Assembly: GCF_032444005.1 (NCBI RefSeq)
Contig: NC_091288.1
Location: 213,280,001 to 213,344,000 of the forward strand
Origin: Ranitomeya imitator
Taxonomy: Eukaryota
Direction of reading: 5' to 3'
DNA: 64,000 nt
Position 1 is the stretch's first letter. Each line of letters begins with the position of its first letter. The notes under the pieces are model-generated. The model ran no database searches, was not told the origin of the DNA, and saw nothing but the letters and a program-made list of their open reading frames with translations. Position numbers and translations under genes: made by a program. Below are positions 17,601-45,016 of the stretch, piece by piece.

Positions 17601-20600
17601 ATAATACTGCTCCTATGTACAGGAATATAACTACTATAATACTGCTCCTATGTACAAGAATATAACTACTATAATACTGCCTCCTATGTACAAGAATATA
17701 ACTACTATAATACTGCCCCTATGTACAAGAATATAACTACTATAATACTGCCCCTATGTACAAGAATATAACTACTATAATACTGCCCCTATGTACAAGA
17801 ATATAACTACTATAATACTGCTCCTATGTACAAGAATATAACTACTATAATACTGCTCCTATGTACAAGAATATAACTACTATAATACTGCTCCTATGTA
17901 CAAGAATATAACTACTATAATACTGCTCCTATGTACAAGAATATAACTACTATAATACTGCCCCCTATGTACAAGAATATAACTACTATAATACCGCCCC
18001 CTATGTACAAGACTATAACCACTATAATACTGCCCCCTATGTACAAGAATATAACTACTATAATACTGCTCCTATGTACAAGAATATAACTACTATAATA
18101 CTGCTCCTATGTACAGGAATATAACTACTATAATACTGTCCCTATGTACAAGAATATAGCTACTATAATACTGCCCCTATTTACAAGAATATAACTACTA
18201 TAATACTGCTCCTATATACAAGAATATAACTACTATAATACTGTCCCTATGTACAAGAATATAGCTACTATAATACTGCCCCTATTTACAAGATTACTAC
18301 TACTATAATACTGCCCCCTATGTACAAGAATATAACTACTATAATACTGCCCCTATGTACAAGAATATAACTACTATAATACTGCCCCTATTTACAAGAT
18401 TACTACTACTATAATACTGCCCCCTATGTACAAGAATATTACTACTATAATACTGCCCCTATGTACAAGAATATAACTACTATAATACTGCCCCTATGTA
18501 CAAGAATATAACTACTATAATACTGCCCCTATTTACAAGAATATTACTACTATAATACTGCCCCTATGTACAAGAATATAACTACTATAATACTGCCCCT
18601 ATGTACAAGAATATAACTACTATAATACTGCCCCTATTTACAAGAATATTACTACTATAATACTGCCCCTATGTACAAGAATATAACTACTATAATACTG
18701 CCCCTATGTACAAGAATATAACTACTATAATACTGCCCCTATGTACAAGAATATAACTACTATAATACTGCCCCTATGTACAAGAATATAACTACTATAA
18801 TACTGCCCCTATGTACAAGAATATAACTACTATAATACTGCCTCCTATGTATAAGAATATAACTACTATAATACTGCCCCTATGTACAAGAATATAACTA
18901 CTATAATACTGCCCCTATGTACAAGAATATAACTACTATAATACTGCCCCTATGTACAAGAATATAACTACTATAATACTGCCCCTATGTACAAGAATAT
19001 AACTACTATAATACTGCCTCCTATGTATAAGAATATAACTACTATAATACTGCCCCTATGTACAAGAATATAACTACTATAATACTGCCCCTATGTACAA
19101 GAATATAACTACTATAATACTGCCCCCTATGGGGGAAGACTATAGGAATTGTACGATAACATGTCTGTCTTTTCCCAGGATCCCTTGCAGTGTCAGTCAC
19201 AGACATGAGAGCCCCATTGGTGGGGGGCTCGGGCGGTGTATATGCGCTGTGTTCTGCCCATCTCGCTAACGTTGTTATGGTGAGTTATTACCTCATACTG
19301 TACATTATATATATCTCGTATATTTTAGCTTATGTCCGCCGGCCTCCTCGCCTGTGAGGCGCCTGATGCAGAGAAATCACTGCAGTGACATCAGTATTAA
19401 AGGACATTTATGAAGGTTATATGAGAAGAATGAATGTGGGCTGAGTCTTCGTCTCTGCGCCCTTCTGCTACCGCCTGTGACACCAGTGACCTGAGGGGAG
19501 GCGACAGCTCGGCACTAGTGACACGGGCGGTGAGGAGCGGAGCTGACGGCGCACAGAGGATTTTCCTCCGCTGGAGGATTATTCTGTGACACGGGGCCGG
19601 AGCGGCGGCATACGGGATGGGGGTCCTGTCATTACAGGGAGGCTCGGCTGCAGTCACGGCGCCCTCAGTAACAGGGAGGCATGAGAACAGGACAAGGCCT
19701 AGTCATGGTTACCATAGCAACCACATCCTGACCTAAATTCACTTACAAGTCAAAGCCCGGCCTGAAATATTAACGGTCACAATTCCGAAATGTAGAAACC
19801 ACCATGCCTGTGCGTCAGGACTCCGATGGCCTCACATGTCGCTGTGCAGCCCTAGTGTTTAGGGGGTATTTCCATCTCCAAGATCTGATCCCAATATGTA
19901 GTGGGTAGAATAATATTAGCAAATACCTTCAAATACAAATGTAGTATAGTTCTTCTGATTAGCTATCTTGCTTACTCCATGTGCAGAGCATTGCATTAGC
20001 TTAGGCATCCATGGTTACTACCACTCATACACTGACAGTTAGTTGCTAGTGGCCATAACCATGGATACCTAAGCTACTGCAGTGCCCCGCACATGGGGTA
20101 AATGGCATAGCTAATCAGAAGAACTATACATTTCTAATTGGAGGTATTTTTTGCTAAATTTTATACCTACTATATATTGGGATAGGATCTTGGGGATGGG
20201 ACAACCAACATGTCCCTGTACACCGGCTGGCTCCCGATAACCTCTCACTTCTCTTCCTGGCAGAACTGGGCCGGGATGCGCTGTCCGTACAAGGTTCTCC
20301 GAATGGTTCTTGCGTTGGTCTGCAGTAAGTATTCACCCCGCTAGAAAAGATTTTACTCCTTTAATCTTCCGTCTTATGAGTGAATATCGTGACCAAATAA
20401 TATCGTGGCCAAATAATGGCGTTTAAAGGGATTCTCCGTGGGGTGCCGATGAGTTCTCATGGCACCAGGGGACCATTGCGGCCATTATTTTCCTCCTGTG
20501 AAGCCCTTGGCAGGAGAACGTCACTTCTAATATATATTGCAATACTGTAGTATAGAAGTATATATAAAAAAAATTGATCAAAATGATCACGTTAAAAAAA

Positions 20601-21899
20601 TAAAAAAAATAAATAAAAAATAAAATCCAAACAAAAGAAATAAAGCAAATCTGGCATCACTGCGCCCATAAAAGTCCAATCTACCATAAGACACAATAAA
20701 AAAAAAATAAATTGTGATTTTTCCATTCATACACCTTGCCCAATTTTTTTTTTTTTTTTTTTTTAAATACAATAAAAAGTGATCCAAACATAGTATATAC
20801 CCCAAAATGTTATCAATAAGAACATCAGGTTATTGTGCAAAAAAAAAAAAAAAAAAAAAAACAAACCCTCACGAAGCTGCATCAAGGAAAAATAAATAAC
20901 AGATATTAGAAAAAAATCAAAAATAGAAAGTAGATATCATTTTTTTTTTTTTACCACTTAGGCTGTGTACGCACATTGCGTTTTTTTCCGATAAAAACGC
21001 TATAAAACCGCAAAAAAAAAACGCATACAATAAGCATCCCATCATTTAGAATGAATTCCGCATGTTTTGTGCACATGATGCGTTTTTTTTTCCGCGAAAA
21101 AAAACGCATCGCGGTAAAAACCGCAGCATGTTCATTAATTTTGCGGTTTTCCCACTACAAAATGCATTGGGAAATGTCCGGAAAAAAACGCGGCAAAACC
21201 GCATGCAGATTTCTTGCAGAAAATGTCCGTTTTTTCTCAGGAATTTTCTGCGGGAAATCCTGAACGTGTGCACATAGCCTAAGGCTGTGTGCACACGTTG
21301 CGTTTTTTCCCCTCGATAAAAACGCATACGTATGCATCCTATCATTTAGAATCCATTCTGCAATTTTTGTGCACATGATGCATCTTTTTCCACGAAAAAA
21401 AAACGCATTGCGGTAAAAAAAAGCAGCATGTTCATTAATTTTGAGGATTTTTCGCGTTTATCCCGCTATTTAATGCATTGGGAAAGCTCTAGAAAGAAAA
21501 AAAAAAAAAAAGAAGTAAAAACCGGATAAAAAAACGCATGCGGATTTCTGGCAGAAATGTCCGTTTTTTGTCCTGAACGTGTGCACGTACCCTGAATCCA
21601 GAGTGACGCTCTTCTCTTTCTCCGCAGTGAGCTCGGAGGTGGGCCGCGCAGTCTGGCTTCGTTTCTCCCCTCCTTTACCGGCCGCTGGCCCTCAGCCCAG
21701 TTTCATGGCGCACCTGGCGGGCGCGGCGGTCGGGGTCAGCATGGGACTCACCATCTTGCGGAGTTACGAGGAGAACCTCCAGGACCAGTGCGGATGGTGG
21801 GTGATCTTGCTTTGCTACGCCACCTTCCTGGCGTTCGCCATTTTCTGGAATGTGTTCGCTTACGACTTGCTCGGAGTCCAGATCCCGCACCCTCCGTGA
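2678..21899 (+). CDS. RHBDL1: Rhomboid-related protein 1 (intramembrane serine protease); 5'-partial, first coding exon upstream of the window
   Basis: Exons 2678-2836, 3541-3765 (GC donor), 8167-8315, 12259-12371, 19179-19279, 20264-20324 and 21628-21899 (TGA). Phases join in frame. The translation ([70 protein letters not shown]) closely matches vertebrate RHBDL1. Catalytic Ser codon at 19229-19231 and His codon at 21711-21713 are intact. Confidence 0.97.
3060..3459. mobile_element. MITE with 19-bp TIRs and TTA target duplication (PIF/Harbinger-like)
   Basis: TTA|GGCTACTTTCACACTAGCG ... CGCTAGTGTGAAAGTAGCC|TTA. 400 bp, internally palindromic, no coding capacity. Confidence 0.9.
4040..4800 (-). 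mobile_element. Degraded Tc1/mariner transposase relic
   Basis: Minus-strand remnants [28 protein letters not shown] and [10 protein letters not shown] (4155-4184) resemble the Tc1 catalytic domain, with many frameshifts. TA|CAGTACTGTGCAAAAGT near 4845 looks like a Tc1-type end. Boundaries are approximate. Confidence 0.65.
4991..6860. repeat. 33-bp minisatellite (CATCATCAGTATCTGGTGAGCGCCTGTTGTCTC) with 30-bp variants
   Basis: Direct tandem periodicity that decays towards the right end. Unit lengths divisible by 3 explain the three ORFs of over 560 aa. Confidence 0.95.
6899..8050. repeat. Inverted-repeat-bounded segment of about 1.15 kb (putative non-autonomous DNA transposon)
   Basis: 6900-7012 (AAACATCTTGGAGAGCTGACCCCAGATCTTC...CCCAGACAGACGGGATGATGTGAGA) is the reverse complement, with one indel, of 7970-8048. 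Confidence 0.55.
12559..19130. repeat. 35-bp (35/36) satellite CTATGTACAAGAATATAACTACTATAATACTGCCC, split by a Helitron
   Basis: Arrays at 12559-14576 and 16159-19130, about 140 units in total, filling most of the RHBDL1 intron 12372-19178. Confidence 0.97.
14577..16158 (-). mobile_element. Non-autonomous Helitron carrying an internal 20-bp VNTR
   Basis: On the minus strand it begins A|TC (16158) and ends with the hairpin CCCGAT-N8-ATCGGG, then 7 nt, then CTAG|T (14577). Inserted at an A|T site with no target duplication. Internal array of GTAGTATATTGCCCAGCCAC at about 14628-15590. Confidence 0.85.
19861..20206. mobile_element. Fold-back MITE (about 345-bp hairpin; AGGGG-type end, T2/Kolobok-like)
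   Basis: The left arm (CCATCTCCAAGATCTGATCCCAATATGTAG...GTTCTTCTGATTAGCTAT) pairs with the right arm. The inner arms (AGCTTAGGCATCCATGGTTA / TAACCATGGATACCTAAGCT) also pair. Confidence 0.75.
20961..21279. mobile_element. MITE (GGCTGTGT..CAC TIR family), first of a tandem pair
   Basis: TTA|GGCTGTGTACGCACATTGCG ... ACGTGTGCACATAGCC|TAA. Confidence 0.85.
21283..21592. mobile_element. MITE of the same family, second of the pair
   Basis: TAA|GGCTGTGTGCACACGTTGCG ... ACGTGTGCACGTACCC|TGA. Internal sequence is colinear with the first copy. It ends 35 bp before the last RHBDL1 exon. Confidence 0.85.
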
Positions 21900-24343
21900 C
21901 CGTCGCCACCCTCCCTACACCCATCGCGCCCTCGACAGCGGACATTATTCTGGTGCTGAATCGGAGCTTGGTCGACAAAATGGCCGAAGCCTCCTCCGGC
22001 GGGACGGAGGAGGAGATCGACAAGGGGAAAGCAGGACGACTAAGAGCCGGGGGGGAGGAGAAGAGCCGCCTTCTCACCTCCGTCCAGTACAGCAGAGTCA
22101 TGTGATGTTTGCTATATATGTGGTTAGGTGACTTTTTTTTTTTTTATAATCAAATTTTTTTTCTCCTTCTGCTGCCTGTAGATTGAGCTAAAACAATAGG
22201 TGGGTTATCGTCGGGCGAGTATACCCCGCCCAAAAATATTTACACTGTGATGTCATAGCGGATACAAGGCTACTGGCCCTTTAAGGCACAGTGGGCGCCA
22301 GTACAATTCAGGCAAGATGGCGGTCGCGGTTACTACTGATGCTAGCGTATACTGCCCACTAGAGGCCGACGGCGGTAATATAACTTTAGAGCACCGATTT
22401 CCTCTACCAGTGGACGGCGCCAATTTTCTGCTTCTTTTAAGAGTATTTACCCCCTAAACGCTCCAAAAAAACCATTTCCAAGAGCCAAAAGTTTTTTTTT
22501 TTTCCCCCGTTACTAGAGTTGCATCTGGGATTTTCTTGTTTTTTTTTTTTTTTTTTTTTAGAATTACCATTTTTGGGTCCGTACGACTTTTCTTTCTGAA
22601 AACAGCATTTTGTATTTTTTTTATTTTTCTACCCCCCGCTCCACATTGTGACAAGAATATATTTTATCAGTTCTGAAAATTACGCGAGCGCCGATCGTTC
22701 GTGTTATATAGAATTTAAAAAATAAAATAAAAATTAAATTGACATTTTTCCCCCCTAAAAAAATGAGGCAATAGGAACTTTTATATATTTTGGGAGGCAG
22801 ACACAGGGGTGCCGTTATTACTGTATTTGCCCCTTCTACCAAGGTGCCATTTGCCAAGTACTGGCGCTCAACCCCTGCTTACCGGTATTTTTTAATTATT
22901 ATTTAAAGGGGAAGTGCCGTTTTTTAATAAATGCCTTAAATTTCCTGTTTATTATGAACCATTTACCTCGGACGAGCAACTAAAAAAAATATTAAAATAA
23001 ATAATAAAAAAAAAAAAAAAAAAAAAAGAGGGGCAACATGGAAGAAGCCGATGCATCCTTTCATCTAATCCAGACTTTCTAGTCGCGGATTTACATAATA
23101 ATCTGCGGGAGTCGGGTTACCATGGTAACGACAAAGCGCATCTGATTATTACGACTCCATCGTTCTTTAATTAGAAATCTTATTATGTTTTAATTTAAAG
23201 GAACAAACTCCTGCTCCGGAGCAGAAATTTCTTTATTTTTCCTGAATATTCCTTCAGAGCTGCATTCAGAATTCAGCAGTACAAAGTCTGACCAAAATCG
23301 CTGTCTGTTTCCAACGGCAACCAGAAGAATTATGAATTCAGCTCCGGATATCACAAAAAAAAAAAAAAAAAGGATTAGTCATGGATTTTGCAGATTACAC
23401 TCTTGCCTGATGATAACCCATCTCCCGACATTTTGTAGCGCTCACAATGTTGCCTCAGTTTTGCGCCTCTCAAAATTTATCCAATTTTTTTTTTTTTTAG
23501 TTTTTTTTTTCTACCGGCCTTTCAGCCTTATAAAGAATGACACAAAGGAGAAGAGAACATGGCGCCAATCTGTCTACAACTTACCAGGGGGAAATGTTTT
23601 GACAGGACACACATGAATGTTATTTGGGTTTTTATAACTTCTCTCAATCTGCATGGAGAATCCTGTCACGTTACAATTTTTAACATCTGACCTAGAAAAT
23701 GGGATAAAAAATAATAATTTCCGATCACAATATGAAATATTTAGAAAATAGACGCAACCTAAAAAATATTTTACCTCACATTTTGATATTCAAGACAATG
23801 GGCGGCCATTTCTGGTGCCAGAAGGATGACTGGCGGCCATTTTAGAACAGAAAACTACCACTTGTGTTCTTCTTCACAGAGCAACCAATCAGATCCTACA
23901 TTTCATTTCTCCCATTGCATTTTACAAATGAAAGCTAAGCTCCGATTGGTTGATATGGGAACTAATCCAAACGCACTTAAGCCTCATTCCTAAATCGGCC
24001 TTGCTGCTCACAGCAACCAATCGCAGTGCTGCTTTTATTTTACCACAGAACCAACAGAAATGAAACCTGAGCTCTCATTGGTTACTATAGGCAACAATGA
24101 CAAGAAGAGGAGATAAAAAAAAAAAATGACTGGCAGCCATTTTGTATAAGCCAACCAGTATAACGTAATGGCAGCCATTTTGAATAACACACAAATGGTG
24201 TCAGATTCCAAAATAAATATATATAAAATGTAATAAAAAGGCAAAAATCTATGTTATAAAGAAAAAAATATATATATATATTTCACAATAGGCAAATTTA
24301 CCGACCAAAAGGAAGAGATTATAAAAAGTAAATTATAAGCATA

Positions 24344-24349
24344 TTTATT
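24344..24349 (-). terminator. Candidate poly(A) signal of the HhH gene
   Basis: AATAAA on the minus strand, about 550 nt after the stop codon. Usage not demonstrated. Confidence 0.4.
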
Positions 24350-24897
24350 ATTCAGAGTATAATACAATGATGGTGTATCTATTATATCGCCCCCTTAACC
24401 CTTGAAAAGACGTCCGAAGTGCCAAAAATGATGAATTTCAGTCCAAATGTAGTGAACAGGGATAATTTTCTACTGACGGAGATTGTGCCACAACGCTTTT
24501 TTATGTTATTTATATTTTGTTCTTATTTGGGAAGATTGTATGAGGAAAATAACAATGGCTTGAAAAAAAAAAAAGACTGAATAAAATCAACATGCTGTAC
24601 ATGACTGAGCCGGTATTATTCTGCACAGCAGTGATATTATGTCTCCGGAGCTGCATTTACACTTCTGCTGTCAGTGAGCGCCTGACTTGTTCAGGGTCAG
24701 TGTCAGGGTGAACACTACAGCTCACAGCGCAGCGGAGTCAGACAAGGCTGCAAAGTGCACAAATACCCCCTAACAAATGTGACCCCTCTGCCCAACGGAT
24801 GTGACAAGTATTCCGAACTATCACTATACAGTGGAGGCCACCACCATCGTACGAAAGCATGAAGAGGTGAACGGGAACAACTATCCTGCTCTAGGGC

Positions 24898-27800
24898 TCA
24901 TCGCTGGATCTTCTGCCTCTTAGGAGGATTTTCTTCCTCATCGTCTGAGAACTCCAGGAGTTTGGGGCACAGTTGTTGGGCTACTTTCCAAGTCCACAGA
25001 CATAGTTCCACACGGTGAGGCGTCCATTCTTCATCCGAGGCTGCAACACACATCGTCTCAGATTATTGGTACTGAAAGAAGATCCTAATCCTGTACGGAT
25101 CCTGAGTTACCTCCTGTATTATACTCCAGAGCTGCACTCACTATTCTGCTGGTGCAGTCACTGTGTACATACATTACTGATCCTGAGTTACATCCTGTAT
25201 TATACCCCAGAGCTGCACTCACTATTCTGCTGGTGCAGTCACTGTGTACATACATTACATTACTGATCCTGAGTTACCTCCTGTATTATACTCCAGAGCT
25301 GCACTCACTATTCTGCTGGTGCAGTCACTGTGTACATACATTACATTACTGATCCTGAGTTACCTCCTGTATTATACCCCAGAGCTGCACTCACTATTCT
25401 GCCGGTGCAGTCACTGTGTACATACATTACATTACTGATCCTGAGTTACATCCTGTATTATACCCCAGAGCTGCACTCACTATTCTGCTGGTGCAGTCAC
25501 TGTGTACATACATTACATTACTGATCCTGAGTTACCTCCTGTATTATACCCCAGAGCTGCACTCACTATTCTGCCGGTGCAGTCACTGCGTACATATATT
25601 ACTGATCCTGTGTTACATCTTGTATTATACCCCAGAGCTGCATTCACTATTCTGCTGGAGCAGTCACTGTGTACATACATTACTGATCCTGAGTTACATT
25701 CTGTATTATACCCCAGAGCTGCACTCACTATTCTGCTGGTGCAGTCACTGTGTACATACATTACATTACTGATCCTGAGTTACATCCTGTATTATATCCC
25801 AGAGCTGCACTCACTATTCTGCTGGTGCAGTCACTGTGTACATACATTACATTACTGATCCTGAGTTACATCCTGTATTATACCCCAGAGCTGCACTCAC
25901 TATTCTGCTGGTGCAGTCACTGTGTACATACATTACATTACTGATCCTGAGTTACAGCCTGTATTATACTCCAGAGCTGCACTCACTATTCTGCTGGTGC
26001 AGTCACTGTGTACATACATTACATTACTGATCCTGAGTTACCTCCTGTATTATACTCCAGAGCTGCACTCACTATTCTGCTGGTGCAGTCACTGTGTACA
26101 TACATTACATTACTGATCCTGAGTTACATTCTGTATTATACCCCAGAGCTGCACTCACTATTCTGCTGGTGCAGTCACTGTGTACATACATTACATTACT
26201 GATCCTGAGTTACATCCTGCATTATACCCCAGAGCAGCACTCACTATTCTGCTGGTGCAGTCACTGTGTACATAAATTACTGATCCTGAGTTACCTCCTG
26301 TATTATACCCCAGAGCTGCACTCACTATTCTGCTGGTGCAGTCACTGTGTACATACATTACATTACTGATCCTGAGTTACAGCCTGTATTATACTCCAGA
26401 GCTGCACTCACTATTCTGCTGGTGCAGTCACTGTGTAACATAGTAACATAGTTAGTAAGGCCGAAAAAAGACATTTGTCCATCCAGTTCAGCCTATATTC
26501 CATCATAATAAATCCCCAGATCTACGTCCTTCTACAGAACCTAATAATTGTATGATACAATATTGTTCTGCTCCAGGAAGACATCCAGGCCTCTCTTGAA
26601 CCCCTCGACTGAGTTCGCCATCACCACCTCCTCAGGCAAGCAATTCCAGATTCTCACTGCCCTAACAGTAAAGAATCCTCTTCTATGTTGGTGGAAAAAC
26701 CTTCTCTCCTCCAGACGCAAAGAATACCCCCTTGTGCCCGTCACCTTCCTTGGTATAAACAGATCCTCAGCGAGATATTTGTATTGTCCCCTTATATACT
26801 TATACATGGTTATTAGATCGCCCCTCAGTCGTCTTTTTTCTAGACTAAATAATCCTAATTTCGCTAATCTATCTGGGTATTGTAGTTCTCCCATCCCCTT
26901 TATTAATTTTGTTGCCCTCCTTTGTACTCTCTCTAGTTCCATTATATCCTTCCTGAGCACCGGTGCCCAAAACTGGACACAGTACTCCATGTGCGGTCTA
27001 ACTAGGGATAATGTACATACATTACATTACTGATCCTGGGTTACATCCTGTATTATACCCTAGAGCTGCACTCACTATTCTGCTGGTGCAGTCACTGTGC
27101 ACATACATTACAATACTGATCCTGAGTTACCTCCTGTATTATACTCCAGAGCTGCACTCACTATTCTGCTGGTGCAGTCACTGTGTACATACATTACAAT
27201 ACTGATCCTGAGTTACCTCCTGTATTATACTCCAGAGCTGCACTCACTATTCTGCTGGTGCAGTCACTGTGCACATACATTACAATACTGATCCTGAGTT
27301 ACCTCCTGTATTATACTCCAGAGCTGTACTCACTATTCTGCTGGTGCAGTCACTGTGTACATACATTACAATACTGATCCTGAGTTACCTCCTGTATTAT
27401 ACTCCAGAGCTGCACTCACTATTCTGCTGGTGCAGTCACTGTGTGCATACATTACATTACTGATCCTGAGTTCCATCCTGTATTATACCCCAGAGCTGCA
27501 CTCACTATTCTGCTGGTGCAGTCACTGTGTACATACATTACATTACTGATCCTGAGTTACATCCTGTATTATACTCCAGAGCTGCAATCACTATTCTGCT
27601 GGTGCAGTCACTGTGTACATACATTACTGATCCTGAGTTACCTCCTGTATTATACTCCGGAGCTGCAATCACTATTCTGCTGGTGCAGTCACTGTGTACA
27701 TACATTACATTACTGATCCTGAGTTACATCCTGTATTATACCCCAGAGCTGCAATCACTATTCTGCTGGTGCAGTCACTGTGTACATACATTACTGATCC

Positions 27801-30800
27801 TGAGTTACCTCCTGTATTATACTCCGGAGCTGCACTCACTGTGTACACACATTACTGTTACACTCCGGAGCTGCACTCACTGTGTACATACATTACTGTT
27901 ACACTCCGGAGCTGCGCTCACTGTGTACATACATTTCTGTTACACTCCGGAGCTGCACTCACTGTGTACATACATTACTGTTACACTCCGGAGCTGCTCT
28001 CACTGTGTACATACATTACTGTAACACTCCGGAGCTGCGCTCACTGTGTACATACATTACTGTTACACTCCGGAGCTGCGCTGTGTACATACATTACTGT
28101 AACACTCCGGAGATGCACTCACTGTGTCCATACATTACTGTTACACTCCGGAGCTGCGCTCACTGTGTCCATACATTACTGTTACACTCCGGAGCTACAC
28201 TCACTGTGTACATACATTCCTGTTACACTCCGGAGCTGCACTCACTGTGTACATACATTACTGTAACACTCCGGAGCTGCGCTCACTGTGTACATACATT
28301 ACTGTTACACTCCGGAGCTGCGCTCACTGTGTCCATACATTACTGTTACACTCCGGAGCTACACTCACTGTGTCCATACATTACTGTTACACTCCGGAGA
28401 TGCACTCACTGTGTACATACATTACTGTTACACTCCGGAGCTGCACTCACTGTGTCCATACATTACTGTTACACTCCGGAGCTGCGCTCACTGTGTCCAT
28501 ACATTACTGTTACACTCCGGAGCTGCGCTCACTGTGTCCATACATTACTGTTACACTCCGGAGCTGCACTCACTGTGTACATACATTCCTGTTACACTCC
28601 GGAGCTGCACTCACTGTGTACATACATTCCTGTTACACTCCGGAGCTGCACTCACTGTGTACATACATTACTGTTACACTCCGGAGCTGCGCTCACTGTG
28701 TACATACATTCCTGTTACACTCCGGAGGTGCACTCACTGTGTCCATACATTCCTGTTACACTCCGGAGGTGCACTCACTGTGTCCATACATTACTGTTAC
28801 ACTCCGGAGCTGCACTCACTGTGTACATACATTACTGTTACACTCCGGAGCTGCACTCACTGTGTACATACATTACTGTTACACTCCGGAGCTGCACTCA
28901 CTGTGTCCATACATTACTGTTACACTCCGGAGCTGCTCTCACTGTGTACATACATTACTGTAACACTCCGGAGCTGCGCTCACTGTGTCCATACATTACT
29001 GTTACACTCCGGAGCTGCGCTCACTGTGTCCATACATTACTGTTACACTCCGGAGCTGCGCTCACTGTGTCCATACATTACTGTTACACTCCGGAGCTGC
29101 GCTCACTGTGTACATACATTACTGTAACACTCCGGAGATGCACTCACTGTGTACATACATTACTGTTACACTCCGGAGCTGCGCTCACTGTGTCCATACA
29201 TTACTGTTACACTCCGGAGATGCACTCACTGTGTACATACATTACTGTTACACTCCGGAGCTGCACTCACTGTGTCCATACATTACTGTTACACTCCGGA
29301 GCTGCTCTCACTGTGTACATACATTACTGTAACACTCCGGAGCTGCGCTCACTGTGTCCATACATTACTGTTACACTCCGGAGCTGCGCTCACTGTGTCC
29401 ATACATTACTGTTACACTCCGGAGCTGCGCTCACTGTGTCCATACATTACTGTTACACTCCGGAGCTGCACTCACTGTGTACATACATTCCTGTTACACT
29501 CCGGAGCTGCACTCACTGTGTACATACATTCCTGTTACACTCCGGAGCTGCACTCACTGTGTACATACATTACTGTTACACTCCGGAGCTGCGCTCACTG
29601 TGTACATACATTCCTGTTACACTCCGGAGGTGCACTCACTGTGTACATACATTACTGTTACACTCCGGAGCTGCGCACATACATTACTGTTACACTCCGG
29701 AGCTGCACTCACTGTGTACATACATTCCTGTTACACTCCGGAGCTGCTCTCACTGTGTACATACATTACTGTTACACTCCGGAGCTGCGCTCACTGTGTA
29801 CATACATTACTGTTACACTCCGGAGCTGCGCTCACTGTGTACATACATTACTGTTACACTCCGGAGATGCACTCACTGTGTCCATACATTACTGTTACAC
29901 TCCGGAGCTACACTCACTGTGTCCATACATTACTGTTACACTCCGGAGCTGCACTCACTGTGTACATACATTCCTGTTACACTTCGGAGCTACACTCACT
30001 GTGTACCTACATTACTGTTACACTCCGGAGCTGCGCTCACTGTGTCCATACATTACTGTTACACTCCGGAGCTGCGCTCACTGTGTCCATACATTACTGT
30101 TACACTCCGGAGCTGCGCTCACTGTGTACATACATTACTGTTACACTCCGGAGCTGCGCTGTGTACATACATTACTGTAACACTCCGGAGCTGCGCTCAC
30201 TGTGTCCATACATTACTGTTACACTCCGGAGCTGCACTCACTGTGTACATACATTACTGTTACACTCCGGAGCTGCACTCACTGTGTACATACATTACTG
30301 TTACACTCCGGAGCTGCGCTGTGTACATACATTCCTGTTACACTCCGGAGCTGCGCTCACTGTGTACATACATTACTGTTACACTCCGGAGCTGCGCTCA
30401 CTGTGTACATACATTACTGTTACACTCCGGAGCTGTGCTCACTGTGTACATACATTACTGTTACACTCCGGAGCTGCGCTCACTGTGTACATACATTACT
30501 GTTACACTCCGGAGCTGCACTCACTGTGTACATACATTACTGTTACACTCCGGAGCTGCACTCACTGTGTACATACATTCCTGTTACACTTCGGAGCTAC
30601 ACTCACTGTGTACCTACATTACTGTTACACTCCGGAGCTGCACTCACTGTGTACATACATTACTGTTACACTCCGGAGCTGCACTCACTGTGTACATACA
30701 TTCCTGTTACACTCCGGAGCTGCACTCACTGTGTCCATACATTCCTGTTACACTCCGGAGCTGCACTCACTGTGTACATACATTCCTGTTACACTCCGGA

Positions 30801-32722
30801 GCTGCACTCACTGTGTACATACATTACTGTTACACTCCGGAGCTGCACTCACTGTGTACATACATTACTGTTACACTCCGGAGCTGCTCTCACTGTGTAC
30901 ATACATTACTGTTACACTCCGGAGCTGCGCTGTGTCCATACATTACTGTTACACTCCGGAGCTGCGCTCACTGTGTCCATACATTCCTGTTACACTCCGG
31001 AGCTGCGCTCACTGTGTCCATACATTACTGTTACACTCCGGAGCTGCTCTCACTGTGTCCATACATTCCTGTTACACTCCGGAGCTGCACTCACTGTGTC
31101 CATACATTCCTGTTACACTCCGGAGCTGCACTCACTGTGTACATACATTCCTGTTACACTCCGGAGCTGCACTCACTGTGTACATACATTACTGTTACAC
31201 TCCGGAGCTGCACTCACTGTGTACATACATTACTGTTACACTCCGGAGCTGCTCTCACTGTGTACATACATTACTGTTACACTCCGGAGCTGCGCTGTGT
31301 CCATACATTACTGTTACACTCCGGAGCTGCGCTCACTGTGTCCATACATTCCTGTTACACTCCGGAGCTGCGCTCACTGTGTCCATACATTACTGTTACA
31401 CTCCGGAGCTGCTCTCACTGTGTCCATACATTCCTGTTACACTCCGGAGCTGCACTCACTGTGTCCATACATTACTGTTACACTCCGGAGCTGCTCTCAC
31501 TGTGTCCATACATTCCTGTTACACTCCGGAGCTGCACTCACTGTGTCCATACATTACTGTTACACTCCGGAGCTGCTCTCACTGTGTCCATACATTCCTG
31601 TTACACTCCGGAGCTGCGCTCACTGTGTCCATACATTACTGTTACACTCCGGAGCTGCGCTCACTGTGTCCATACATTCCTGTTACACTCCGGAGCTGCA
31701 CTCACTGTGTACATACATTACTGTTACACTCCGGAGCTGCACTCACTGTGTACATACATTACTGTTACACTCCAGAGCTGCGCTCACTGTGTCCATACAT
31801 TACTGTTACACTCCGGAGCTGCGCTCACTGTGTCCATATATTACTGTTACACTCCGGAGCTGCGCTCACTGTGTCCATACATTCCTGTTACACTCCGGAG
31901 CTGCGCTCACCGTTGCTCAGGGCCTCGGCCTTCCGCTGCAGCGCCCCCAGGTACCTCAGGTAGTGCTTGGCGTTGTACTGCACAGGTGACAGGCCCGGGA
32001 CGCTCTCCACGGCTTCGTCTGCCATGAACGCCGCCATGTCCGGGGCGCCGGCTGACAGCACCGCTGGATTTGGGGGGGAAGGCAGAGGATTCTCAGTCAC
32101 ACCACGGTGGCACCGGGCTAACGTCACCATGGTAACCGCGGTGGGCGGGCCGCACTCACCGGACGCCGTGGCCGGGCCGACGCCCTTCAGCTGGCACAGC
32201 TCCTGGATGGCGGCGGACACGTCTGGCAGCAGCAGGAAGGCTCTCCCGGAGCAGCGCTCCACCGCACCCGCCGAGTTACACGACACCAGCTGCTTCAGGC
32301 GCGGACGAAACTTCCCCCTCTGCCGGACACAAAGGGGAAACCATGAGCGTCCTTAAAGGGGCGGTCACTCACCATGGCGACCGTGGGAAGAGGCCGGCGC
32401 TCACCGTCAGCTTCCACTCCATCAGCTTCTCCAGCTCCTCCAGCGTCAGGGACCTGTGCGGGCGAGCGGCCATGGCGGCCGGCAGCTCCTCCCGACACCT
32501 GCGCACATAACACAACCTTGTTATTTTTAACTCTTTCCCTCCGCAGCCATTCTTTTTGTGACTGACCCCCACGATGGCCGCCGCCGCCTCTCACCATTTC
32601 TCCAGCTCCAGGAGACGCTTCTGCTTCGCCGCCTTCGCCGCCACCACCTCCCAGTACACGGCGGACACGCGCTGCCACTTTTTCGGATCGCTGCAGTGGT
32701 AAAGGTCGGACCCGGAAGCCAT
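24898..32722 (-). CDS. Uncharacterised 225-aa helix-hairpin-helix (HhH-GPD-like) putative DNA glycosylase, probably nuclear (Amun-like family, from recall)
   Basis: Exons 32722-32595, 32498-32405, 32319-32160, 32063-31911 and 25040-24898 (678 nt). All introns are GT-AG, phases are consistent, and the start context is AAAATGG. Protein: MASGSDLYHCSDPKKWQRVSAVYWEVVAAKAAKQKRLLELEKWCREELPAAMAARPHRSLTLEELEKLMEWKLTRGKFRPRLKQLVSCNSAGAVERCSGRAFLLLPDVSAAIQELCQLKGVGPATASAVLSAGAPDMAAFMADEAVESVPGLSPVQYNAKHYLRYLGALQRKAEALSNASDEEWTPHRVELCLWTWKVAQQLCPKLLEFSDDEEENPPKRQKIQR. It contains the HhH motif LKGVGPATA and an NLS-like PPKRQK. Confidence 0.9.
25097..27830. repeat. 86-bp satellite (81-bp variants) in intron 4 of the HhH gene
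   Basis: Unit GATCCTGAGTTACCTCCTGTATTATACTCCAGAGCTGCACTCACTATTCTGCTGGTGCAGTCACTGTGTACATACATTACATTACT. ORF starts recur every 86 nt. Interrupted by a CR1 fragment. Confidence 0.95.
26438..27011 (-). mobile_element. 5'-truncated CR1-clade LINE (ORF2 C-terminus, 3' UTR and ACTATGTT tail)
   Basis: ORF 26541-26990 (EYCVQFWAP..KDIMELERVQRRATKLI..LGLFSLEKRRLRGDLITMYK..FFTVRAVRIWNCLP) is the typical CR1 ORF2 end. The short repeated tail lies at 26438-26455, and TGTA flanks both junctions. Confidence 0.92.
27826..31910. repeat. 41-bp satellite (CTCACTGTGTACATACATTACTGTTACACTCCGGAGCTGCA), about 100 units
   Basis: Direct periodicity. It abuts exon 4 of the HhH gene with no spacer and is a deletion derivative of the 86-bp unit. 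Confidence 0.97.
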
Positions 32723-33380
32723 TTTTGGTGGGATTTTTCTTTATTCACAGTAACAATAAGAAAAAAAATGTGGGAAAAAAAGGTAGAAAAACAATCACAA
32801 GATTATCCTGCGAGACAATGTCGCTAAGAATCTGCATAATCGGCGCCTCAATAGTGAAACCCCTGATGTTTACCTAATACTGCGCCACAGCAGCGTAGTC
32901 GGAAAAGTAAAGGGGAATTTTTTTTTTTTTTTTAAATAAAAAAAATGACGAATAACCGATTCCCCTGCACGTCCACACACAGAGCAGCCGCCTGTCACCG
33001 GCAAGGTCCTTCTCCCGCGCTCCTGAGCTGGCTCCTTAGTTTGGTTGGGTCACATGACTGCGTTCCAGCTCAGCTTTGCGTTCCACAAGAGGCCGAATGC
33101 TGATTGGCGTCTCCTGTTGCTTGTTTAGAAATCTGACCAATCAAAGACGAAGTAAGTCTAAACGCCAGAGGTTGCGCATTGCGAGCAAAAATTGTCGCCT
33201 TCTCCAAGGTCATTTTTGTTCAGACATTTTACCTATTGTTTTACGGATTATTTGCTCTACGACAAAATGGCCGCAACTGTACAAAGCACTGTTGTAAACG
33301 AGGACACGAATGTCAATGTTGTCAAATACGCTGTGTCAGTCGGCGGATGCCCCGGAAGTTCCGGCTGGAGGTTGTAGGTT
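32723..33380. promoter_or_regulatory. Putative CpG-rich bidirectional promoter (HhH gene / STUB1)
   Basis: Lies between divergent genes. Opposed CCAAT boxes (ATTGG 33103-33107, CCAAT 33137-33141), YY1-like AAAATGGCCGC (33264-33274) and ETS/GABP CCGGAAGT (33352-33359). Transcription start sites are not determinable from sequence. Confidence 0.65.
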
Positions 33381-34165: not shown

Positions 34166-34434
34166 TAGGTTGTATTGAGATCTGAGCCTCTGGGGTCCTA
34201 CTTGCAACCCCCCGTGCTTTCTGGCTGCTATTATGAGGGTGTAGGGGGCCTTCGTCCTCCTGTCATGGTGCCCGCGACTTCTTATTAATTGTCCCCTGGA
34301 GGATAGACTTTGACTCTTGACATCACTGATAGAAGGGGGTCCCCTCCAGATTTAGGGGTCCCGTCTCTGCAGTGAAATTGGGGGTGGCACCAAGCATCCC
34401 CAGGTTTGGAGGGGTGACCCCCGGAGGTCCTGGG

Positions 34435-37400
34435 ATGAAGGGGAAGGAGGAGAGCGGGAGCGGCGGAGGTCGTCTATCTGGAGTCAGCGGCAGTCCGGGG
34501 GGCATTGGGGGGAGTCCAGAGAAGAGTGTCAGTGCCCAGGAGCTGAAGGAACAGGGCAACAGGCTGTTCGTAGCCAGAAAATACCAAGAAGCAGTTTCCT
34601 GCTACAGCAAAGCCATCGTAAGTGTCCACACAAGGAAAATACTCTGTGCTGCTGTGAGACCAGTATATGTGACCACTGACACCCACTTCTCATATGACAC
34701 CATCCTGTCCTCATCATGGTCACACGGGAATGGTCCCGACTTCACATTATCAATACCCTCACTCCCTGTAACACTCTGTGCTGCCGGGGACCCTCAGGAC
34801 ACCCCCTCTGTCATGTGCAGCCTTATCCTCCACATCATACACCTCTGCTGTAACACTCTGTGCTGCTGGGGACCCTCAGGACACCCCCCTCTGTCATGTG
34901 CAGCCTTATCCTCCACATCATACACCTCTGCTGTAACACTCTGTGCTGCTGGGGACCCTAAGGACACCCCCTCTGTCATGTGCAGCCTTATCCTCCACAT
35001 CATACACCTCTGCTGTAACACTCTGTGCTGCTGGGGACCCTCAGGACACCCCCTCTGTCATGTGCAGCCTTATCCTCCACATCATACACCTCTGCTGTAA
35101 CGCTCTGTGCTGCTGGGGACCCTCAGGACACCCCATCTGTCATGTGCAGCCTTATCCTCCACATTATACACCTCTGCTGTAACACTCTGTGCTGCTGGGG
35201 ACTCTCAGGACACCCCCTCTGTCATGTGCAGCGTTATCCTCTACATCATACACCTCTGCTGTAACACTCTGTGCTGCTGGGGACCCTCAGGACACCCCCT
35301 CTGTCATGTGCAGCCTTATCCTCCACATCATACACCTCTGCTGTAACACTCTGTGCTGCTGGGGACCCTAAGGACACCCCCTCTGTCATGTGCAGCCTTA
35401 TCCTCCACATCATACACCTCTGCTGTAACACTCTGTGCTGCTGGGGACCCTCAGGACACCCCCTCTGTCATGTGCAGCCTTATCCTCCACATCATACACC
35501 TCTGCTGTAACACTCTGTGCTGCTGGGGACCCTCAGGACACCCCCTCTGTCATGTGCAGCCTTATCCTCCACATCAAACACCTCTGCTGTAACACTCTGT
35601 GCTGCTGGGGACCCTCAGGACACCCCCTCTGTCATGTGCAGCCTTATCCTCCACATCATACACCTCTGCTGTAACACTCTGTGCTGCTGGGGACCCTCAG
35701 GACACCCCCTCTGTCATGTGCAGCCTTATCCTCCACATCAAACACCTCTGCTGTAACACTCTGTGCTGCTGGGGACCCTCAGGACACCCCCTCTGTCATG
35801 TGCAGCGTTATCCTCTACATCATACACCTCTGCTGTAACACTCTGTGCTGCTGGGGACCCTCAGGACACCCCCTCTGTCATGTGCAGCCTTATCCTCCAC
35901 ATTATACACCTCTGCTGTAACACTCTGTGCTGCTGGGGACCCTCAGGACACCCCATCTGTCATGTGCAGCCTTATCCTCCACATCTTACACCTCTGCTGT
36001 AACACTCTGTGCTGCCGGGGACCCTCAGGACACCCCCCTCTGTCATGTGCAGCCTTATCCTCCACATCATACACCTCTGCTGTAACACTCTGTGCTGCTG
36101 GGGACCCTAAGGACACCCCCTCTGTCATGTGCAGCCTTATCCTCCACATCATACACCTCTGCTGTAACACTCTGTGCTGCTGGGGACCCTCAGGACACCC
36201 CCTCTGTCATGTGCAGCCTTATCCTCCACATCATACACCTCTGCTGTAACACTCTGTGCTGCTGGGGACCCTCAGGACACCCCCTCTGTCATGTGCAGCC
36301 TTATCCTCCACATTATACACCTCTGCTGTAACACTCTGTGCTGCTGGGGACCCTAAGGACACCCCCTCTGTCATGTGCAGCCTTATCCTCCACATCATAC
36401 ACCTCTGCTGTAACACTCTGTGCTGCTGGGGACCCTCAGGACACCCCCTCTGTCATGTGCAGCCTTATCCTCCACATCATACACCTCTGCTGTAACACTC
36501 TGTGCTGCTGGGGACCCTAAGGACACCCCCTCTGTCATGTGCAGCCTTATCCTCCACATCATACACCTCTGCTGTAACACTCTGTGCTGCTGGGGACCCT
36601 CAGGACACCCCCTCTGTCATGTGCAGCCTTATCCTCCACATCATACACCTCTGCTGTAACACTCTGTGCTGCTGGGGACCCTCAGGACACCCCCTCTGTC
36701 ATGTGCAGCCTTATCCTCCACATCATACACCTCTGCTGTAACACTCTGTGCTGCCGGGGACCCTCAGGACACCCCCCTCTGTCATGTGCAGCCTTATCCT
36801 CCACATCAAACACCTCTGCTGTAACACTCTGTGCTGCTGGGGACCCTCAGGACACCCCCTCTGTCATGTGCAGCCTTATCCTCCACATCATACACCTCTG
36901 CTGTAACACTCTGTGCTGCTGGGGACCCTCAGGACACCCCCTCTGTCATGTGCAGCCTTATCCTCCACATCAAACACCTCTGCTGTAACACTCTGTGCTG
37001 CTGGGGACCCTCAGGACACCCCCTCTGTCATGTGCAGCGTTATCCTCTACATCATACACCTCTGCTGTAACACTCTGTGCTGCTGGGGACCCTCAGGACA
37101 CCCCCTCTGTCATGTGCAGCCTTATCCTCCACATTATACACCTCTGCTGTAACACTCTGTGCTGCTGGGGACCCTCAGGACACCCCATCTGTCATGTGCA
37201 GCCTTATCCTCCACATCTTACACCTCTGCTGTAACACTCTGTGCTGCTGGGGACCCTCAGGACACCCCCTCTGTCATGTGCAGCCTTATCCTCTACATCA
37301 TACACCTCTGCTGTAACACTCTGTGCTGCTGGGGACCCTCAGGACACCCCCTCCGTCATGTGCAGCCTTATCCTCCACATCATACACCTCTGCTGTAACA

Positions 37401-44791: not shown

Positions 44792-45016
44792 AATCCTTAA
44801 ACTTTAAAACCTGAAAACCGAAAAATCCAAACTAAAAAAAAGTGCAAAAGTTGTTCGCTATGAGCAGCCACCATGTCAGTCCGGGGGGCCTCGGTGCTTC
44901 CCCCCGCCGGTCAGCATGAAGGGGACTCCGCTGATCACGCCGCTCGTCGCAGTGGTCAGCCTGCGCTCTGAGGTCTCTGGTTGTCGTACAGCAGAACGGT
45001 GGTAATGGGGGAGTCT

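What the first reader, a model, noticed from the sequence alone, without database searches (positions are those of the whole stretch)
24898..32722. Unnamed, intact HhH DNA-glycosylase-like gene between RHBDL1 and STUB1, absent from the human gene order
Seen: five exons splice with canonical sites into a stop-free 225-aa protein. It has an HhH motif (LCQLKGVGPATA), a W-K-L-T-R-G-K-F-R-P block, an acidic patch and a terminal PPKRQK NLS. The ORF track shows only fragments and misses the last exon 6.9 kb away. Established: human 16p13.3 runs RHBDL1-STUB1-JMJD8 with no such protein gene that I know of. Recall, unverified: the sequence resembles the Drosophila Amun / Arabidopsis At3g12210 family of poorly characterised nuclear HhH proteins. 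Inference: an ancient eukaryotic DNA-repair or DNA-demodification enzyme of unknown substrate, kept in amphibians and lost on the mammalian line.
Basis: partly seen in the sequence, partly recalled or inferred. Interest (0 to 1): 0.9.

Follow-up and report, generated by a model that had tools for sequence, protein, structure and literature searches.

The report
Frog orthologue of Amun, HhH-GPD protein
The five-exon gene is real, expressed and under purifying selection, but it is the frog copy of a widely annotated, functionally uncharacterised glycosylase-like gene (fly Amun, fish zgc:112496) that many mammals also keep in the same place, so it was not lost on the mammalian line.

Summary
Observation confirmed. 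On the minus strand, five exons (32722-32595, 32498-32405, 32319-32160, 32063-31911, 25040-24898) join through GT..AG into a 225-aa ORF. RNA contigs from several public runs span all four coding junctions, including 31911|25040.

The protein is 93% identical to a RefSeq protein of Ranitomeya variabilis. It belongs to a pan-eukaryotic family with 2785 representatives at 50% identity, which includes fish zgc:112496 and insect Amun. Frog dN/dS is 0.1-0.2.

An AlphaFold model (pLDDT 88.8) is closest to the Ogg2 8-oxoguanine glycosylases (Z 9-10), then to EndoIII, OGG1 and MutY (Z about 7). The canonical HhH-GPD Asp (D143) is invariant. The position of the lyase lysine is an invariant Ala (A124). 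I therefore read it as a monofunctional glycosylase, or a non-catalytic reader of flipped bases. Its substrate is unknown.

The evolutionary claim fails. Monotremes, marsupials and many placentals carry an annotated orthologue with the same exon sizes between STUB1 and RHBDL1. A colobine monkey has a decayed copy. RefSeq labels the hedgehog protein STUB1-DT, which suggests decay in some lineages, probably including primates.

The same window carries three related first-stage notes; the scan found nothing like it on other DNA. The gene itself is ordinary, but its family is still an open biochemical question.

The parts
32874..32903 (-). 3' end of a non-coding 5'UTR exon; its upstream limit was not determined
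   Evidence: Loose ends of RNA contigs beyond 32769 in four runs match window 32874-32903 exactly. A GT donor follows at 32873-32872.
32595..32769 (-). Exon with the start codon: 5'UTR 32769-32723, CDS 32722-32595 (128 nt, residues 1-42 plus 2 nt)
   Evidence: RNA contigs cover 32592-32769. Frogs and mammals have the same 128-nt first coding exon.
32405..32498 (-). Coding exon 2 (94 nt). It ends with W71-K72-L73-T74, the start of the invariant WK..RGKFRPRL block
   Evidence: RNA joints on both sides. The 94-nt size is conserved.
32160..32319 (-). Coding exon 3 (160 nt): R75-GKFRPRL, then the helix-hairpin-helix L115-S127 at 32199-32161, with A124 where bifunctional enzymes have the lyase lysine
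   Evidence: Pfam HHH PF00633 is at its gathering score in the near-identical P0001. A124 and G122 are invariant in 59 diverse representatives.
32064..32159 (-). Intron 3: 96 nt, in frame and free of stops; possibly retained in some transcripts
   Evidence: The ORF 31888-32286 reads through it. Spliced out in X1 and X5, but a 155-nt X10 contig reads through. The database model P0008 starts at an ATG inside it.
31911..32063 (-). Coding exon 4 (153 nt). It holds the invariant Asp143 (32019-32017) and Glu144 of the FMADE motif
   Evidence: D143 is invariant. It aligns with the catalytic D138 of E. coli MutY.
25041..31910 (-). Intron 4 (6870 nt), almost wholly tandem repeats: an 86-bp unit at 25094-26442 and 27012-27840, and a 41-bp unit in about 100 copies at 27817-31910 that abuts the donor
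   Evidence: RNA contigs skip it.
24898..25040 (-). Last coding exon (143 nt including TGA): W184-TPH..E190..W194 helix, acidic patch, and basic C-terminal PPKRQK (24927-24910), a putative NLS
   Evidence: The RNA contig runs from 25041 downwards.
23810..24897 (-). 3'UTR, with a poly(A) site near 24319 and a longer form reaching about 23810 or beyond
   Evidence: X10 and X5 contigs end at 24319 and 24311. X10 has a T-run loose end there, which is poly(A) on the minus strand. The X1 contig reaches 23810 and X9 reaches 23502.
34372..43942 (+). Neighbour STUB1/CHIP, head to head with the gene
   Evidence: ORFs with CHIP-like TPR and U-box sequence. Pfam TPR_1 at 1.4e-14 and U-box at 1.3e-21.
2642..21899 (+). 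Neighbour RHBDL1-like rhomboid gene, tail to tail with the gene
   Evidence: ORFs. Pfam Rhomboid at 1.8e-06. The neighbours are the same in R. variabilis, reindeer, cattle, zebra and a monkey.

Best explanation
This is the poison-frog orthologue of the Amun / zgc:112496 gene, probably from Ranitomeya imitator. It is transcribed divergently from STUB1 and spliced from one UTR exon and five coding exons. It encodes a 225-aa protein that is probably nuclear. The whole structured part (residues about 5-205) is a two-lobed, all-helical HhH-GPD DNA-glycosylase fold, closest to the small Ogg2 enzymes.

Shown here: the gene model, its expression, its orthology, purifying selection, the fold, and conservation of the motifs.

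Inferred: the helix-hairpin-helix (L115-S127) holds the DNA backbone, and the invariant basic/aromatic loop W71-K72..R75-G-K-F-R-P-R-L82 reaches into the helix while a base is flipped into the cleft. The invariant Asp143, which sits 21 residues after the hairpin Gly as in EndoIII, MutY and OGG1, then promotes hydrolysis of the N-glycosidic bond. Because the lyase lysine position is an invariant alanine (A124), the protein cannot act as a glycosylase/AP-lyase through the usual Schiff base. If it is active, it is a monofunctional glycosylase that leaves an AP site. The substrate base is unknown.

My odds: about 0.97 that it is a real gene and an Amun orthologue with an HhH-GPD fold, and about 0.45 that it is a catalytically active monofunctional glycosylase.
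For: Gene model. RNA contigs cross all junctions. The protein is 93% identical to RefSeq LOC143785416 of R. variabilis and 60-88% identical to other frog proteins. Exon sizes 128/94/160/153 are identical in Engystomops, Xenopus laevis, Spea, cattle, zebra and reindeer. dN/dS is 0.11-0.20 between the window and other frogs, and 0.18-0.28 between cattle and zebra. A profile of the vertebrate proteins finds 2785 representatives, among them a Drosophila protein at 1.5e-53 whose close relatives are named Amun. It also finds choanoflagellate, rhizarian and amoebozoan proteins. The AF2 model has pLDDT 88.8 and pTM 0.85. The Foldseek top hits are all HhH-GPD glycosylases, with probabilities up to 0.93-0.96. 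VIA-align gives Ogg2 3n0u Z 10.3, 3knt 10.1 and 3fhg 9.2 over residues 5-200, followed by a step down to Z 7.0. K72, G76, G122, A124 and D143 are invariant in 59 representatives that share under 50% identity. The profile aligns GVGpATA..FmaD with MutY GVGRSTA..PILD, so A124 matches S120 and D143 matches D138. PF21790 'OGG-like' matches 10 of 28 members weakly, best E 6.8e-05.
Against: No activity has been shown for any member. The one genetic study I could trace (Shalaby et al. 2009, PMID 19448274, known here only through citing papers) describes Amun as a nuclear protein with a putative glycosylase domain that acts in Notch and bristle development. That fits a regulatory role as well. Pfam HhH-GPD (PF00730) does not match, and sequence matches to solved glycosylases are not significant (E 0.1-1). 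Foldseek E-values are weak (0.09-1) and global TM is only 0.39-0.46. A Z of 10 for an all-helical model lies inside the range where VIA-align's notes advise caution. Cetartiodactyls carry Glu in place of the 'invariant' Asp yet remain under constraint. HhH-GPD homologues without activity exist, for example S. pombe Mag2 (4b21, Z 6.5-6.8).
Confidence: 0.55

Rival explanations
1. The protein is a non-catalytic DNA-binding or chromatin regulator that only reuses the glycosylase fold. It would recognise AP sites, a lesion or a modified base, or simply bind DNA, and would act through partners. This would resemble S. pombe Mag2, and it matches how Amun is described in fly development.
For: Amun was found as a modifier of Notch signalling and is described as a nuclear transcriptional regulator (citing Shalaby 2009). 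At3g12210, if it is a member, is described as a DNA-binding protein and a two-hybrid partner of TERT and POT1a. Cetartiodactyls carry Asp-to-Glu. Structural kin of the fold in bacteria are fused to nuclease domains (FokI, PLD, NucS, McrB), where such a domain would act as a sensor rather than an enzyme. Mag2 is among the fold matches.
Against: The canonical Asp is invariant across 59 representatives that share under 50% identity. The neighbouring Glu144 is nearly invariant there and invariant in alignment A2. That pattern is expected for a catalytic residue and is less necessary for a binder. Ala at the lysine position is what monofunctional enzymes such as MutY (Ser) show.
Confidence: 0.35
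2. It is a true Ogg2-type bifunctional 8-oxoguanine glycosylase/AP lyase.
For: The Ogg2 structures are the best fold matches, and there is a weak PF21790 'OGG-like' signal.
Against: The catalytic lysine of the HhH is an invariant alanine. There is no significant sequence match to Ogg2, to Pfam HhH-GPD or to any NCBIfam glycosylase model.
Confidence: 0.03
3. One reading: the gene is kept in amphibians and was lost on the mammalian line.
For: No human protein appeared in any search. RefSeq names the hedgehog orthologue 'STUB1-DT', the symbol of a human divergent non-coding transcript. A colobine monkey has a damaged copy. The elephant sequence looks degenerate.
Against: Intact orthologues are annotated in monotremes, marsupials, afrotherians (manatee), ungulates, bats, a rodent (beaver), a shrew and a hedgehog. 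Synteny was confirmed in three species. Exon structure is identical. dN/dS between cattle and zebra is 0.18-0.28.
Confidence: 0.02
4. It is a chance ORF or a pseudogene, not a functional gene in this frog.
For: Intron 4 is filled with satellites carrying about 100 donor-like words. The 5'UTR intron ends in AC in this assembly. The species' own database model is a truncated 120-aa protein.
Against: Spliced RNA is found in several independent studies. The ORF is intact, dN/dS is low and every family-invariant residue is kept.
Confidence: 0.01

Closest known systems
Drosophila Amun (CG2446) and its insect orthologues
   Same: The N-terminal 210-220 residues align end to end with the frog protein: the vertebrate profile hits a Drosophila member at E 1.5e-53 over positions 5-211 of 228. 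The same motifs recur: WK..RGKF.P.L, LKGVG...AS and FMADE. Amun is reported as nuclear with a putative glycosylase domain.
   Different: Insect proteins are 300-590 aa and carry a long low-complexity C-terminal tail that vertebrates lack. The vertebrate protein is just the domain plus an acidic patch and a basic tail. No vertebrate phenotype is known.
Vertebrate 'uncharacterized protein zgc:112496 / LOC...' genes (RefSeq), including mammalian copies next to STUB1
   Same: These are orthologues. They share length (225-240 aa), five coding exons of 128/94/160/153 plus a last exon, and position between STUB1 and RHBDL1.
   Different: Only detail differs. Intron 4 here is inflated to 6.9 kb by satellites. 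Cetartiodactyls have Glu for Asp143. The primate and elephant copies look decayed.
Ogg2 family 8-oxoguanine DNA glycosylase/AP lyases (Thermotoga Tm1821 3n0u, M. jannaschii 3knt, Sulfolobus 3fhg)
   Same: They are of similar size (about 205 aa) and have a two-lobed HhH-GPD fold without an extra N-terminal domain. They are the best structural matches over nearly the whole length (Z 9.2-10.3). The Asp follows the HhH.
   Different: Sequence identity is 14-18%, with no significant sequence match. The catalytic Lys is replaced by an invariant Ala, so lyase chemistry is not expected. The WK..RGKFRPRL block is specific to the Amun family.
Monofunctional HhH-GPD glycosylases (MutY, AlkA, Mag1)
   Same: The HhH, loop and Asp are arranged the same way. 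A non-lysine residue occupies the lyase position: MutY S120 matches A124 and MutY D138 matches D143. Fold matches score Z 6.4-6.8.
   Different: There is no Fe-S cluster motif and no MutY C-terminal domain. There is no significant sequence similarity outside the HhH.
Pfam PF21790 'Putative 8-oxoguanine DNA glycosylase OGG-like protein' (bacterial and archaeal, often fused to nucleases)
   Same: It gives a weak but recurrent profile match over most of the domain (10 of 28 members, best E 6.8e-05). Predicted structures of such proteins are the Atlas's structural neighbours of the family.
   Different: All scores are below the gathering cut-off (27 bits). Those proteins are prokaryotic, and many are parts of nuclease fusions.

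Membership tests
Amun / zgc:112496 family | Full-length sequence similarity to proteins named Amun | tested here: met
   Profile A1 hits Drosophila ficusphila P0173 at 1.5e-53 over positions 5-211. P0173's nearest relatives are named Amun in D. takahashii, pseudoobscura, virilis, busckii, Glossina and others.
Amun / zgc:112496 family | Family-invariant residues K72, G76, G122, A124 and D143, plus W71, R79, P80, L82, the P123-A128 run, F140 and E144 | tested here: met
   All are present in the window's translation. Invariance was measured on 59 representatives.
Amun / zgc:112496 family | Orthologous position in vertebrates (between STUB1 and RHBDL1) and the same exon structure | tested here: met
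   window; other species; exon sizes.
Amun / zgc:112496 family | Nuclear localisation | not testable with these tools
   Only a conserved basic C-terminal patch (PPKRQK here, RPxKKxKTK in the consensus) is seen.
HhH-GPD DNA glycosylase superfamily | Helix-hairpin-helix followed by a Gly/Pro-rich loop and an Asp about 20 residues after the hairpin | tested here: met
   LKGVGPATASAVLSAGAPDMAAFMAD: the Asp is 21 residues after G122. The alignment to MutY puts D143 on D138.
HhH-GPD DNA glycosylase superfamily | Two-lobed all-helical fold with the cleft between the lobes | tested here: met
   AF2 pLDDT 88.8. 138 of 503 compared chains score Z 5 or more, and all 50 entries listed are HhH-GPD enzymes, best Z 10.3. 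Foldseek probability is up to 0.96. The global TM is low, at 0.39-0.46.
HhH-GPD DNA glycosylase superfamily | Match to the Pfam HhH-GPD model PF00730 | tested here: not met
   There was no PF00730 hit at E up to 10 for five proteins, or up to 1 for 28 members. Only HHH and HHH_5 matched.
HhH-GPD DNA glycosylase superfamily | N-glycosylase activity on DNA | not testable with these tools
   No paper with a biochemical assay of any family member was found.
Ogg2 (8-oxoG glycosylase/AP lyase) | Catalytic lysine two residues after the second hairpin glycine | tested here: not met
   Ala124, invariant across the family.
Ogg2 (8-oxoG glycosylase/AP lyase) | Single-domain Ogg2-type fold | tested here: met
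   3n0u, 3knt and 3fhg are the top three matches, covering residues 5-200 against whole chains. Archaeal Ogg2 entries top the Swiss-Prot models.
Ogg2 (8-oxoG glycosylase/AP lyase) | 8-oxoG-specific pocket residues | not tested
   The tools return neither a residue-level structural alignment nor model coordinates.
Pfam PF21790 OGG-like | Score above the gathering cut-off (27 bits) | tested here: inconclusive
   Scores are 13-15 bits for single vertebrate proteins. Ten of 28 members match at E up to 1, best 6.8e-05.

The most novel reading that the evidence does not exclude
The Amun / zgc:112496 clade is an active, so far unassayed, monofunctional DNA glycosylase family. It is present across eukaryotes and acts on a base that no known enzyme covers: a damaged, telomeric or epigenetically modified base. 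Primates, and so probably humans, have lost it, leaving only the STUB1 divergent transcript. Most other vertebrates, many mammals among them, still use it.
Probability: 0.3. Interest if true: 0.65.

Novelty: already known. Interest (0 to 1): 0.33.

Why it matters
For this genome the result is an annotation fix. The only database model that appears to come from this species (P0008, R. imitator) is a 120-aa truncation that starts inside intron 3. The full 225-aa, five-exon gene is supported by RNA.

More broadly, the work shows that a highly conserved, pan-eukaryotic HhH-GPD family still has no known substrate. Its canonical Asp is invariant, and the lyase-lysine position is an invariant Ala. 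The gene is easy to study in Xenopus, in zebrafish (zgc:112496) and in many mammals.

The gene appears to have decayed in at least one primate, and its mammalian locus carries the label STUB1-DT. That may explain why it has escaped attention in human-centred DNA-repair catalogues. This is a modest lead for DNA-repair biochemists, not a new kind of system.

Tried and rejected
- The first reference calls had reversed coordinates or the wrong frame and failed.
- A sequence search of the PDB gave only insignificant HhH matches, to MutY, ComEA and EndoIII. This held for both the vertebrate profile and the broad profile.
- NCBIfam gave only sub-threshold HhH noise from IS110, ComEA, RuvA and MutY models.
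- Literature searches found no paper on function. 'zgc 112496' returned 0 papers. 'STUB1-DT' returned one expression list. 'CG2446' returned mostly methylation-array probe names. The Ogg2/HhH-GPD query returned 0.
- The Amun paper (PMC2728848) is not held, so its content is cited only through papers that cite it.
- The look-up of encoding contigs gave no DNA for R. variabilis because the file is too large. It had no record for Phyllobates.
- My spliced mapper failed on the X. tropicalis isoform X1, which has a different first exon, so that species is left out of the dN/dS table.
- NG86 dS was saturated (-1 or above 2) for the deep frog pairs and for frog-mammal pairs. Only the closer pairs are used.
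- I considered whether the 32-aa in-frame intron 3 is coding. I rejected this because X1 and X5 splice it out and no orthologue has the insert.
- I rejected a bifunctional Ogg2 reading because A124 is invariant.
- Presence or absence in human, mouse, birds and crocodilians was not tested. None appeared among the 240 listed hits, but those lists are truncated.

Full report
**1. The observation**

On the minus strand the coding exons are 32722-32595, 32498-32405, 32319-32160, 32063-31911 and 25040-24898. Each intron starts GT and ends AG. The five pieces total 678 nt and translate without a stop into 225 residues, ending at a TGA at 24900-24898. All the quoted features are present: the hairpin ELCQLKGVGPATAS, the WKLTRGKFRPRL block, the DDEEE patch and the terminal PPKRQK. 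The ORF list does show the gene only in fragments. Intron 3 (96 nt) is in frame and free of stops, which let me use window:31912-32319 as a search query.

**2. Expression and junctions**

Runs found with exons 1-4 hold assembled RNA contigs of 1876 nt (X1), 1388 nt (X5), and 901 and 458 nt (X10). These lie on the exons and skip the introns. The joints are 32063|32160, 32319|32405 and 32495-8|32592-5, each CT..AC on the plus strand, which is GT..AG on the gene's strand.

- The sequence hanging off 31911 is identical to window 25011-25040.
- Conversely, the sequence hanging off 25041 is the end of exon 4.
- The 6.9-kb junction 31911|25040 is therefore confirmed in X1, X5 and X10, which come from three studies. 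X9, from a fourth study, confirms the joints of introns 1 and 2.

The contigs also reveal a non-coding upstream exon ending at 32874 and joined to 32769. They show a poly(A) site near 24319 and a longer 3'UTR reaching at least 23810.

The runs differ from the window at a few bases. Two of these changes turn the window's Q202 and I223 into the K and T seen in the database proteins. This is ordinary polymorphism.

**3. Surroundings**

- Downstream of the gene's 3' end, on the plus strand, lie rhomboid exons. The Pfam Rhomboid matches lie at 12167-21899.
- Upstream, head to head, lie CHIP/STUB1 exons with TPR and U-box domains, at 34372-43942.
- Intron 4 is almost entirely tandem repeat. There is an 86-bp unit, and a 41-bp unit in about 100 copies that ends exactly at the exon-4 donor.

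**4. Identity**

- The exon 3-4 query found 169 proteins. The spliced model is 93% identical over all 225 residues to 'uncharacterized protein LOC143785416' of Ranitomeya variabilis. It is 88% identical to Phyllobates and 60-80% to other frogs.
- A 120-aa 'unnamed protein product' of R. imitator is identical over exon 4 but starts at an ATG inside intron 3. That model is truncated, and the window probably comes from that species or a very close one. This last point is an inference.
- The R. variabilis gene has the same neighbours.
- Fish orthologues are named zgc:112496. Lizards, snakes, turtles, caecilians, gar and coelacanth also have the gene.
- A profile of 28 vertebrate sequences, searched against 1.84 billion representatives, found 2785 proteins at E up to 0.001 and 300 at E up to 1e-30.
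- Those I looked up are from a crinoid, a snail, an ostracod, a choanoflagellate, Bigelowiella, Phalansterium and Artemidia. One is a 558-aa Drosophila ficusphila protein.
- That fly protein's close relatives carry the name Amun in many flies and other insects.
- The Arabidopsis locus could not be checked. Papers call it an uncharacterised DNA-binding protein, a two-hybrid partner of TERT and POT1a.

**5. Mammals**

One representative was from reindeer. Its locus reads WDR24 - JMJD8 - STUB1 - this gene - RHBDL1 - RHOT2. Searching with the reindeer protein listed annotated orthologues in many mammals:

- cattle, musk deer, deer, hippopotamus, horse and zebra, pig and warthog, camelids, beluga and dolphin;
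- two bat families, manatee, dugong, beaver, shrew and hedgehog;
- five marsupials, platypus and echidna.

Cattle and zebra loci show the same STUB1 and RHBDL1 neighbours. My spliced mapping reproduces each annotated protein exactly. The first four coding exons are 128, 94, 160 and 153 nt in four frogs and two mammals, the same sizes as in the window.

The gene is thus not lost on the mammalian line. Decay is lineage-specific:

- The elephant protein lacks the RGKFRPRL block and has His for Asp143.
- The colobine monkey Pygathrix has, in the syntenic place, a copy with ATG changed to ATA, a 6-nt deletion in exon 2, Thr for Ala124, and damaged 5' parts of exons 4 and 5.
- RefSeq calls the hedgehog protein 'STUB1-DT', the symbol of the human divergent transcript of STUB1. 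This suggests, but does not prove, that the human remnant is that non-coding RNA. I did not examine human sequence.

**6. Selection**

| Pair | dN/dS (NG86) | dN/dS (ML) |
|---|---|---|
| Window vs a frog transcript (Logan contig, intact 225-aa CDS) | 0.20 | 0.17 |
| Window vs Engystomops | 0.16 | 0.11 |
| Engystomops vs that transcript | 0.13 | 0.14 |
| Cattle vs zebra | 0.28 | 0.18 |
| Cattle vs reindeer (very short branch) | 0.54 | 0.45 |

Deeper pairs are saturated at synonymous sites. The frog gene is clearly under purifying selection, and the ungulate copies somewhat less so.

**7. Fold and active site**

- Pfam sees only the HHH motif, at its gathering score. There is also a weak, recurrent match to PF21790 'OGG-like'. 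PF00730 does not match.
- The AlphaFold model, built on the 93%-identical P0001 with a 28-row alignment, has pLDDT 88.8 and pTM 0.85. It is all-helical to residue 207.
- Foldseek's best PDB and Swiss-Prot matches are all HhH-GPD glycosylases, led by archaeal Ogg2. Probabilities reach 0.96, but E-values are poor and TM is about 0.4-0.46.
- VIA-align on the same candidates puts three Ogg2 structures first: 3n0u at Z 10.3, 3knt at 10.1 and 3fhg at 9.2, covering residues 5-200. A step down follows to EndoIII, OGG1, Mag1/Mag2 and MutY at Z 6.3-7.0.
- The tool's own caution applies: helical models often reach such Z values. However, the ranking is coherent and covers the whole domain.
- AFDB clusters contain many uncharacterised eukaryotic proteins with this fold. 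Some are auto-named HhH-GPD or DNA glycosylase.
- Across 59 representatives that share under 50% identity, the invariant columns are K72, G76, G122, A124 and D143.
- The profile aligns GVGpATA...FmaD with E. coli MutY GVGRSTA...PILD. That alignment is insignificant as a search hit. From established knowledge of the superfamily, it places D143 on the catalytic Asp138, and A124 on Ser120, the position of the Schiff-base lysine in EndoIII (K120) and OGG1 (K249).
- D143 lies 21 residues after the second hairpin glycine, as in OGG1.

**8. Mechanism**

Shown: the fold class and the motif conservation.

Inferred: a base-flipping HhH-GPD protein in which Asp143 is the catalytic residue and no lyase lysine is available. 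If it is active, it is a monofunctional glycosylase. The invariant WK..RGKFRPRL loop is a candidate DNA-intercalating or phosphate-binding element. The basic C-terminus is a candidate NLS.

The main rival is a non-catalytic reader or regulator. It is supported by the developmental genetics of Amun, by Glu for Asp in cetartiodactyls, by the existence of inactive homologues such as Mag2, and by bacterial structural kin fused to nuclease domains. No paper with an enzymatic assay of the family was found.

**9. Verdict**

It is wrong on novelty and on mammalian loss. The gene is an orthologue of widely annotated genes, so the kind is already known. What remains open is the biochemical function of the family.

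Noticed in passing
window 32770-32873 (minus strand): RNA contigs of four runs join the 5'UTR exon at 32874 to 32769. In this assembly the intron ends ...CCCAC, that is AC rather than AG. This could be a SNP or assembly error at 32770, or a non-canonical acceptor.
   Followed up: partly
window 27817-31910: A 41-bp satellite in about 100 copies ends exactly at the exon-4 splice donor. Every unit carries a GTGAG-type donor-like word, yet RNA contigs show only the 31911|25040 joint. An 86-bp satellite fills 25094-26442 and 27012-27840. Word depth over 25096-25200 in RNA runs is enormous, so that unit is dispersed genome-wide.
   Followed up: partly
window 26541-26990 (minus strand): A 149-aa ORF interrupts the 86-bp satellite inside intron 4. 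It resembles the C-terminal end of a LINE/CR1-type reverse transcriptase. It had no Pfam match at E up to 0.01.
   Followed up: partly
window 32064-32159: Intron 3 is 96 nt, in frame and without a stop. One X10 contig reads through it. Retention would insert 32 residues between the HhH and the catalytic Asp. The R. imitator database protein P0008 starts at an ATG inside this intron.
   Followed up: partly
window 34700-37900, 40500-43100, 45000-55400 and 57700-59600: Long tandem-repeat arrays (units of about 82 bp and others) fill the STUB1 introns and the region beyond. They produce very long spurious ORFs on both strands.
   Followed up: no
window 62718-63740 (minus strand): An intact 340-aa ORF looks like a Tc1/mariner-type transposase.
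   Followed up: no
window 56056-56958 (minus strand): A 300-aa ORF looks like a fragment of a LINE reverse transcriptase.
   Followed up: no
L009:5000-6500 (Pygathrix nigripes): The syntenic primate copy of the gene has ATG changed to ATA, a 6-nt deletion in exon 2, Thr for Ala124, and disrupted 5' parts of exons 4 and 5. The annotated 271-aa 'hypothetical protein' there is probably a pseudogene product.
   Followed up: yes
L003 (Engystomops pustulosus): The orthologue lies inside the span of a 1845-aa WDR90-like gene model on the same strand. This is either a nested gene or a merged annotation.
   Followed up: no
AFDB clusters A0A1E4TTH7 and A0A1Y2TSW2: In some fungi the same fold appears in one predicted protein together with a BUD32/KEOPS-type kinase. 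This is either a real fusion or merged neighbouring genes.
   Followed up: no
alignment A2, column of D143: Cattle, reindeer, hippopotamus and pig have Glu in place of the otherwise invariant Asp (FMSEEAV). Other placentals have FMSDEAV. Monotremes, marsupials and non-mammals have FMADEAV.
   Followed up: partly
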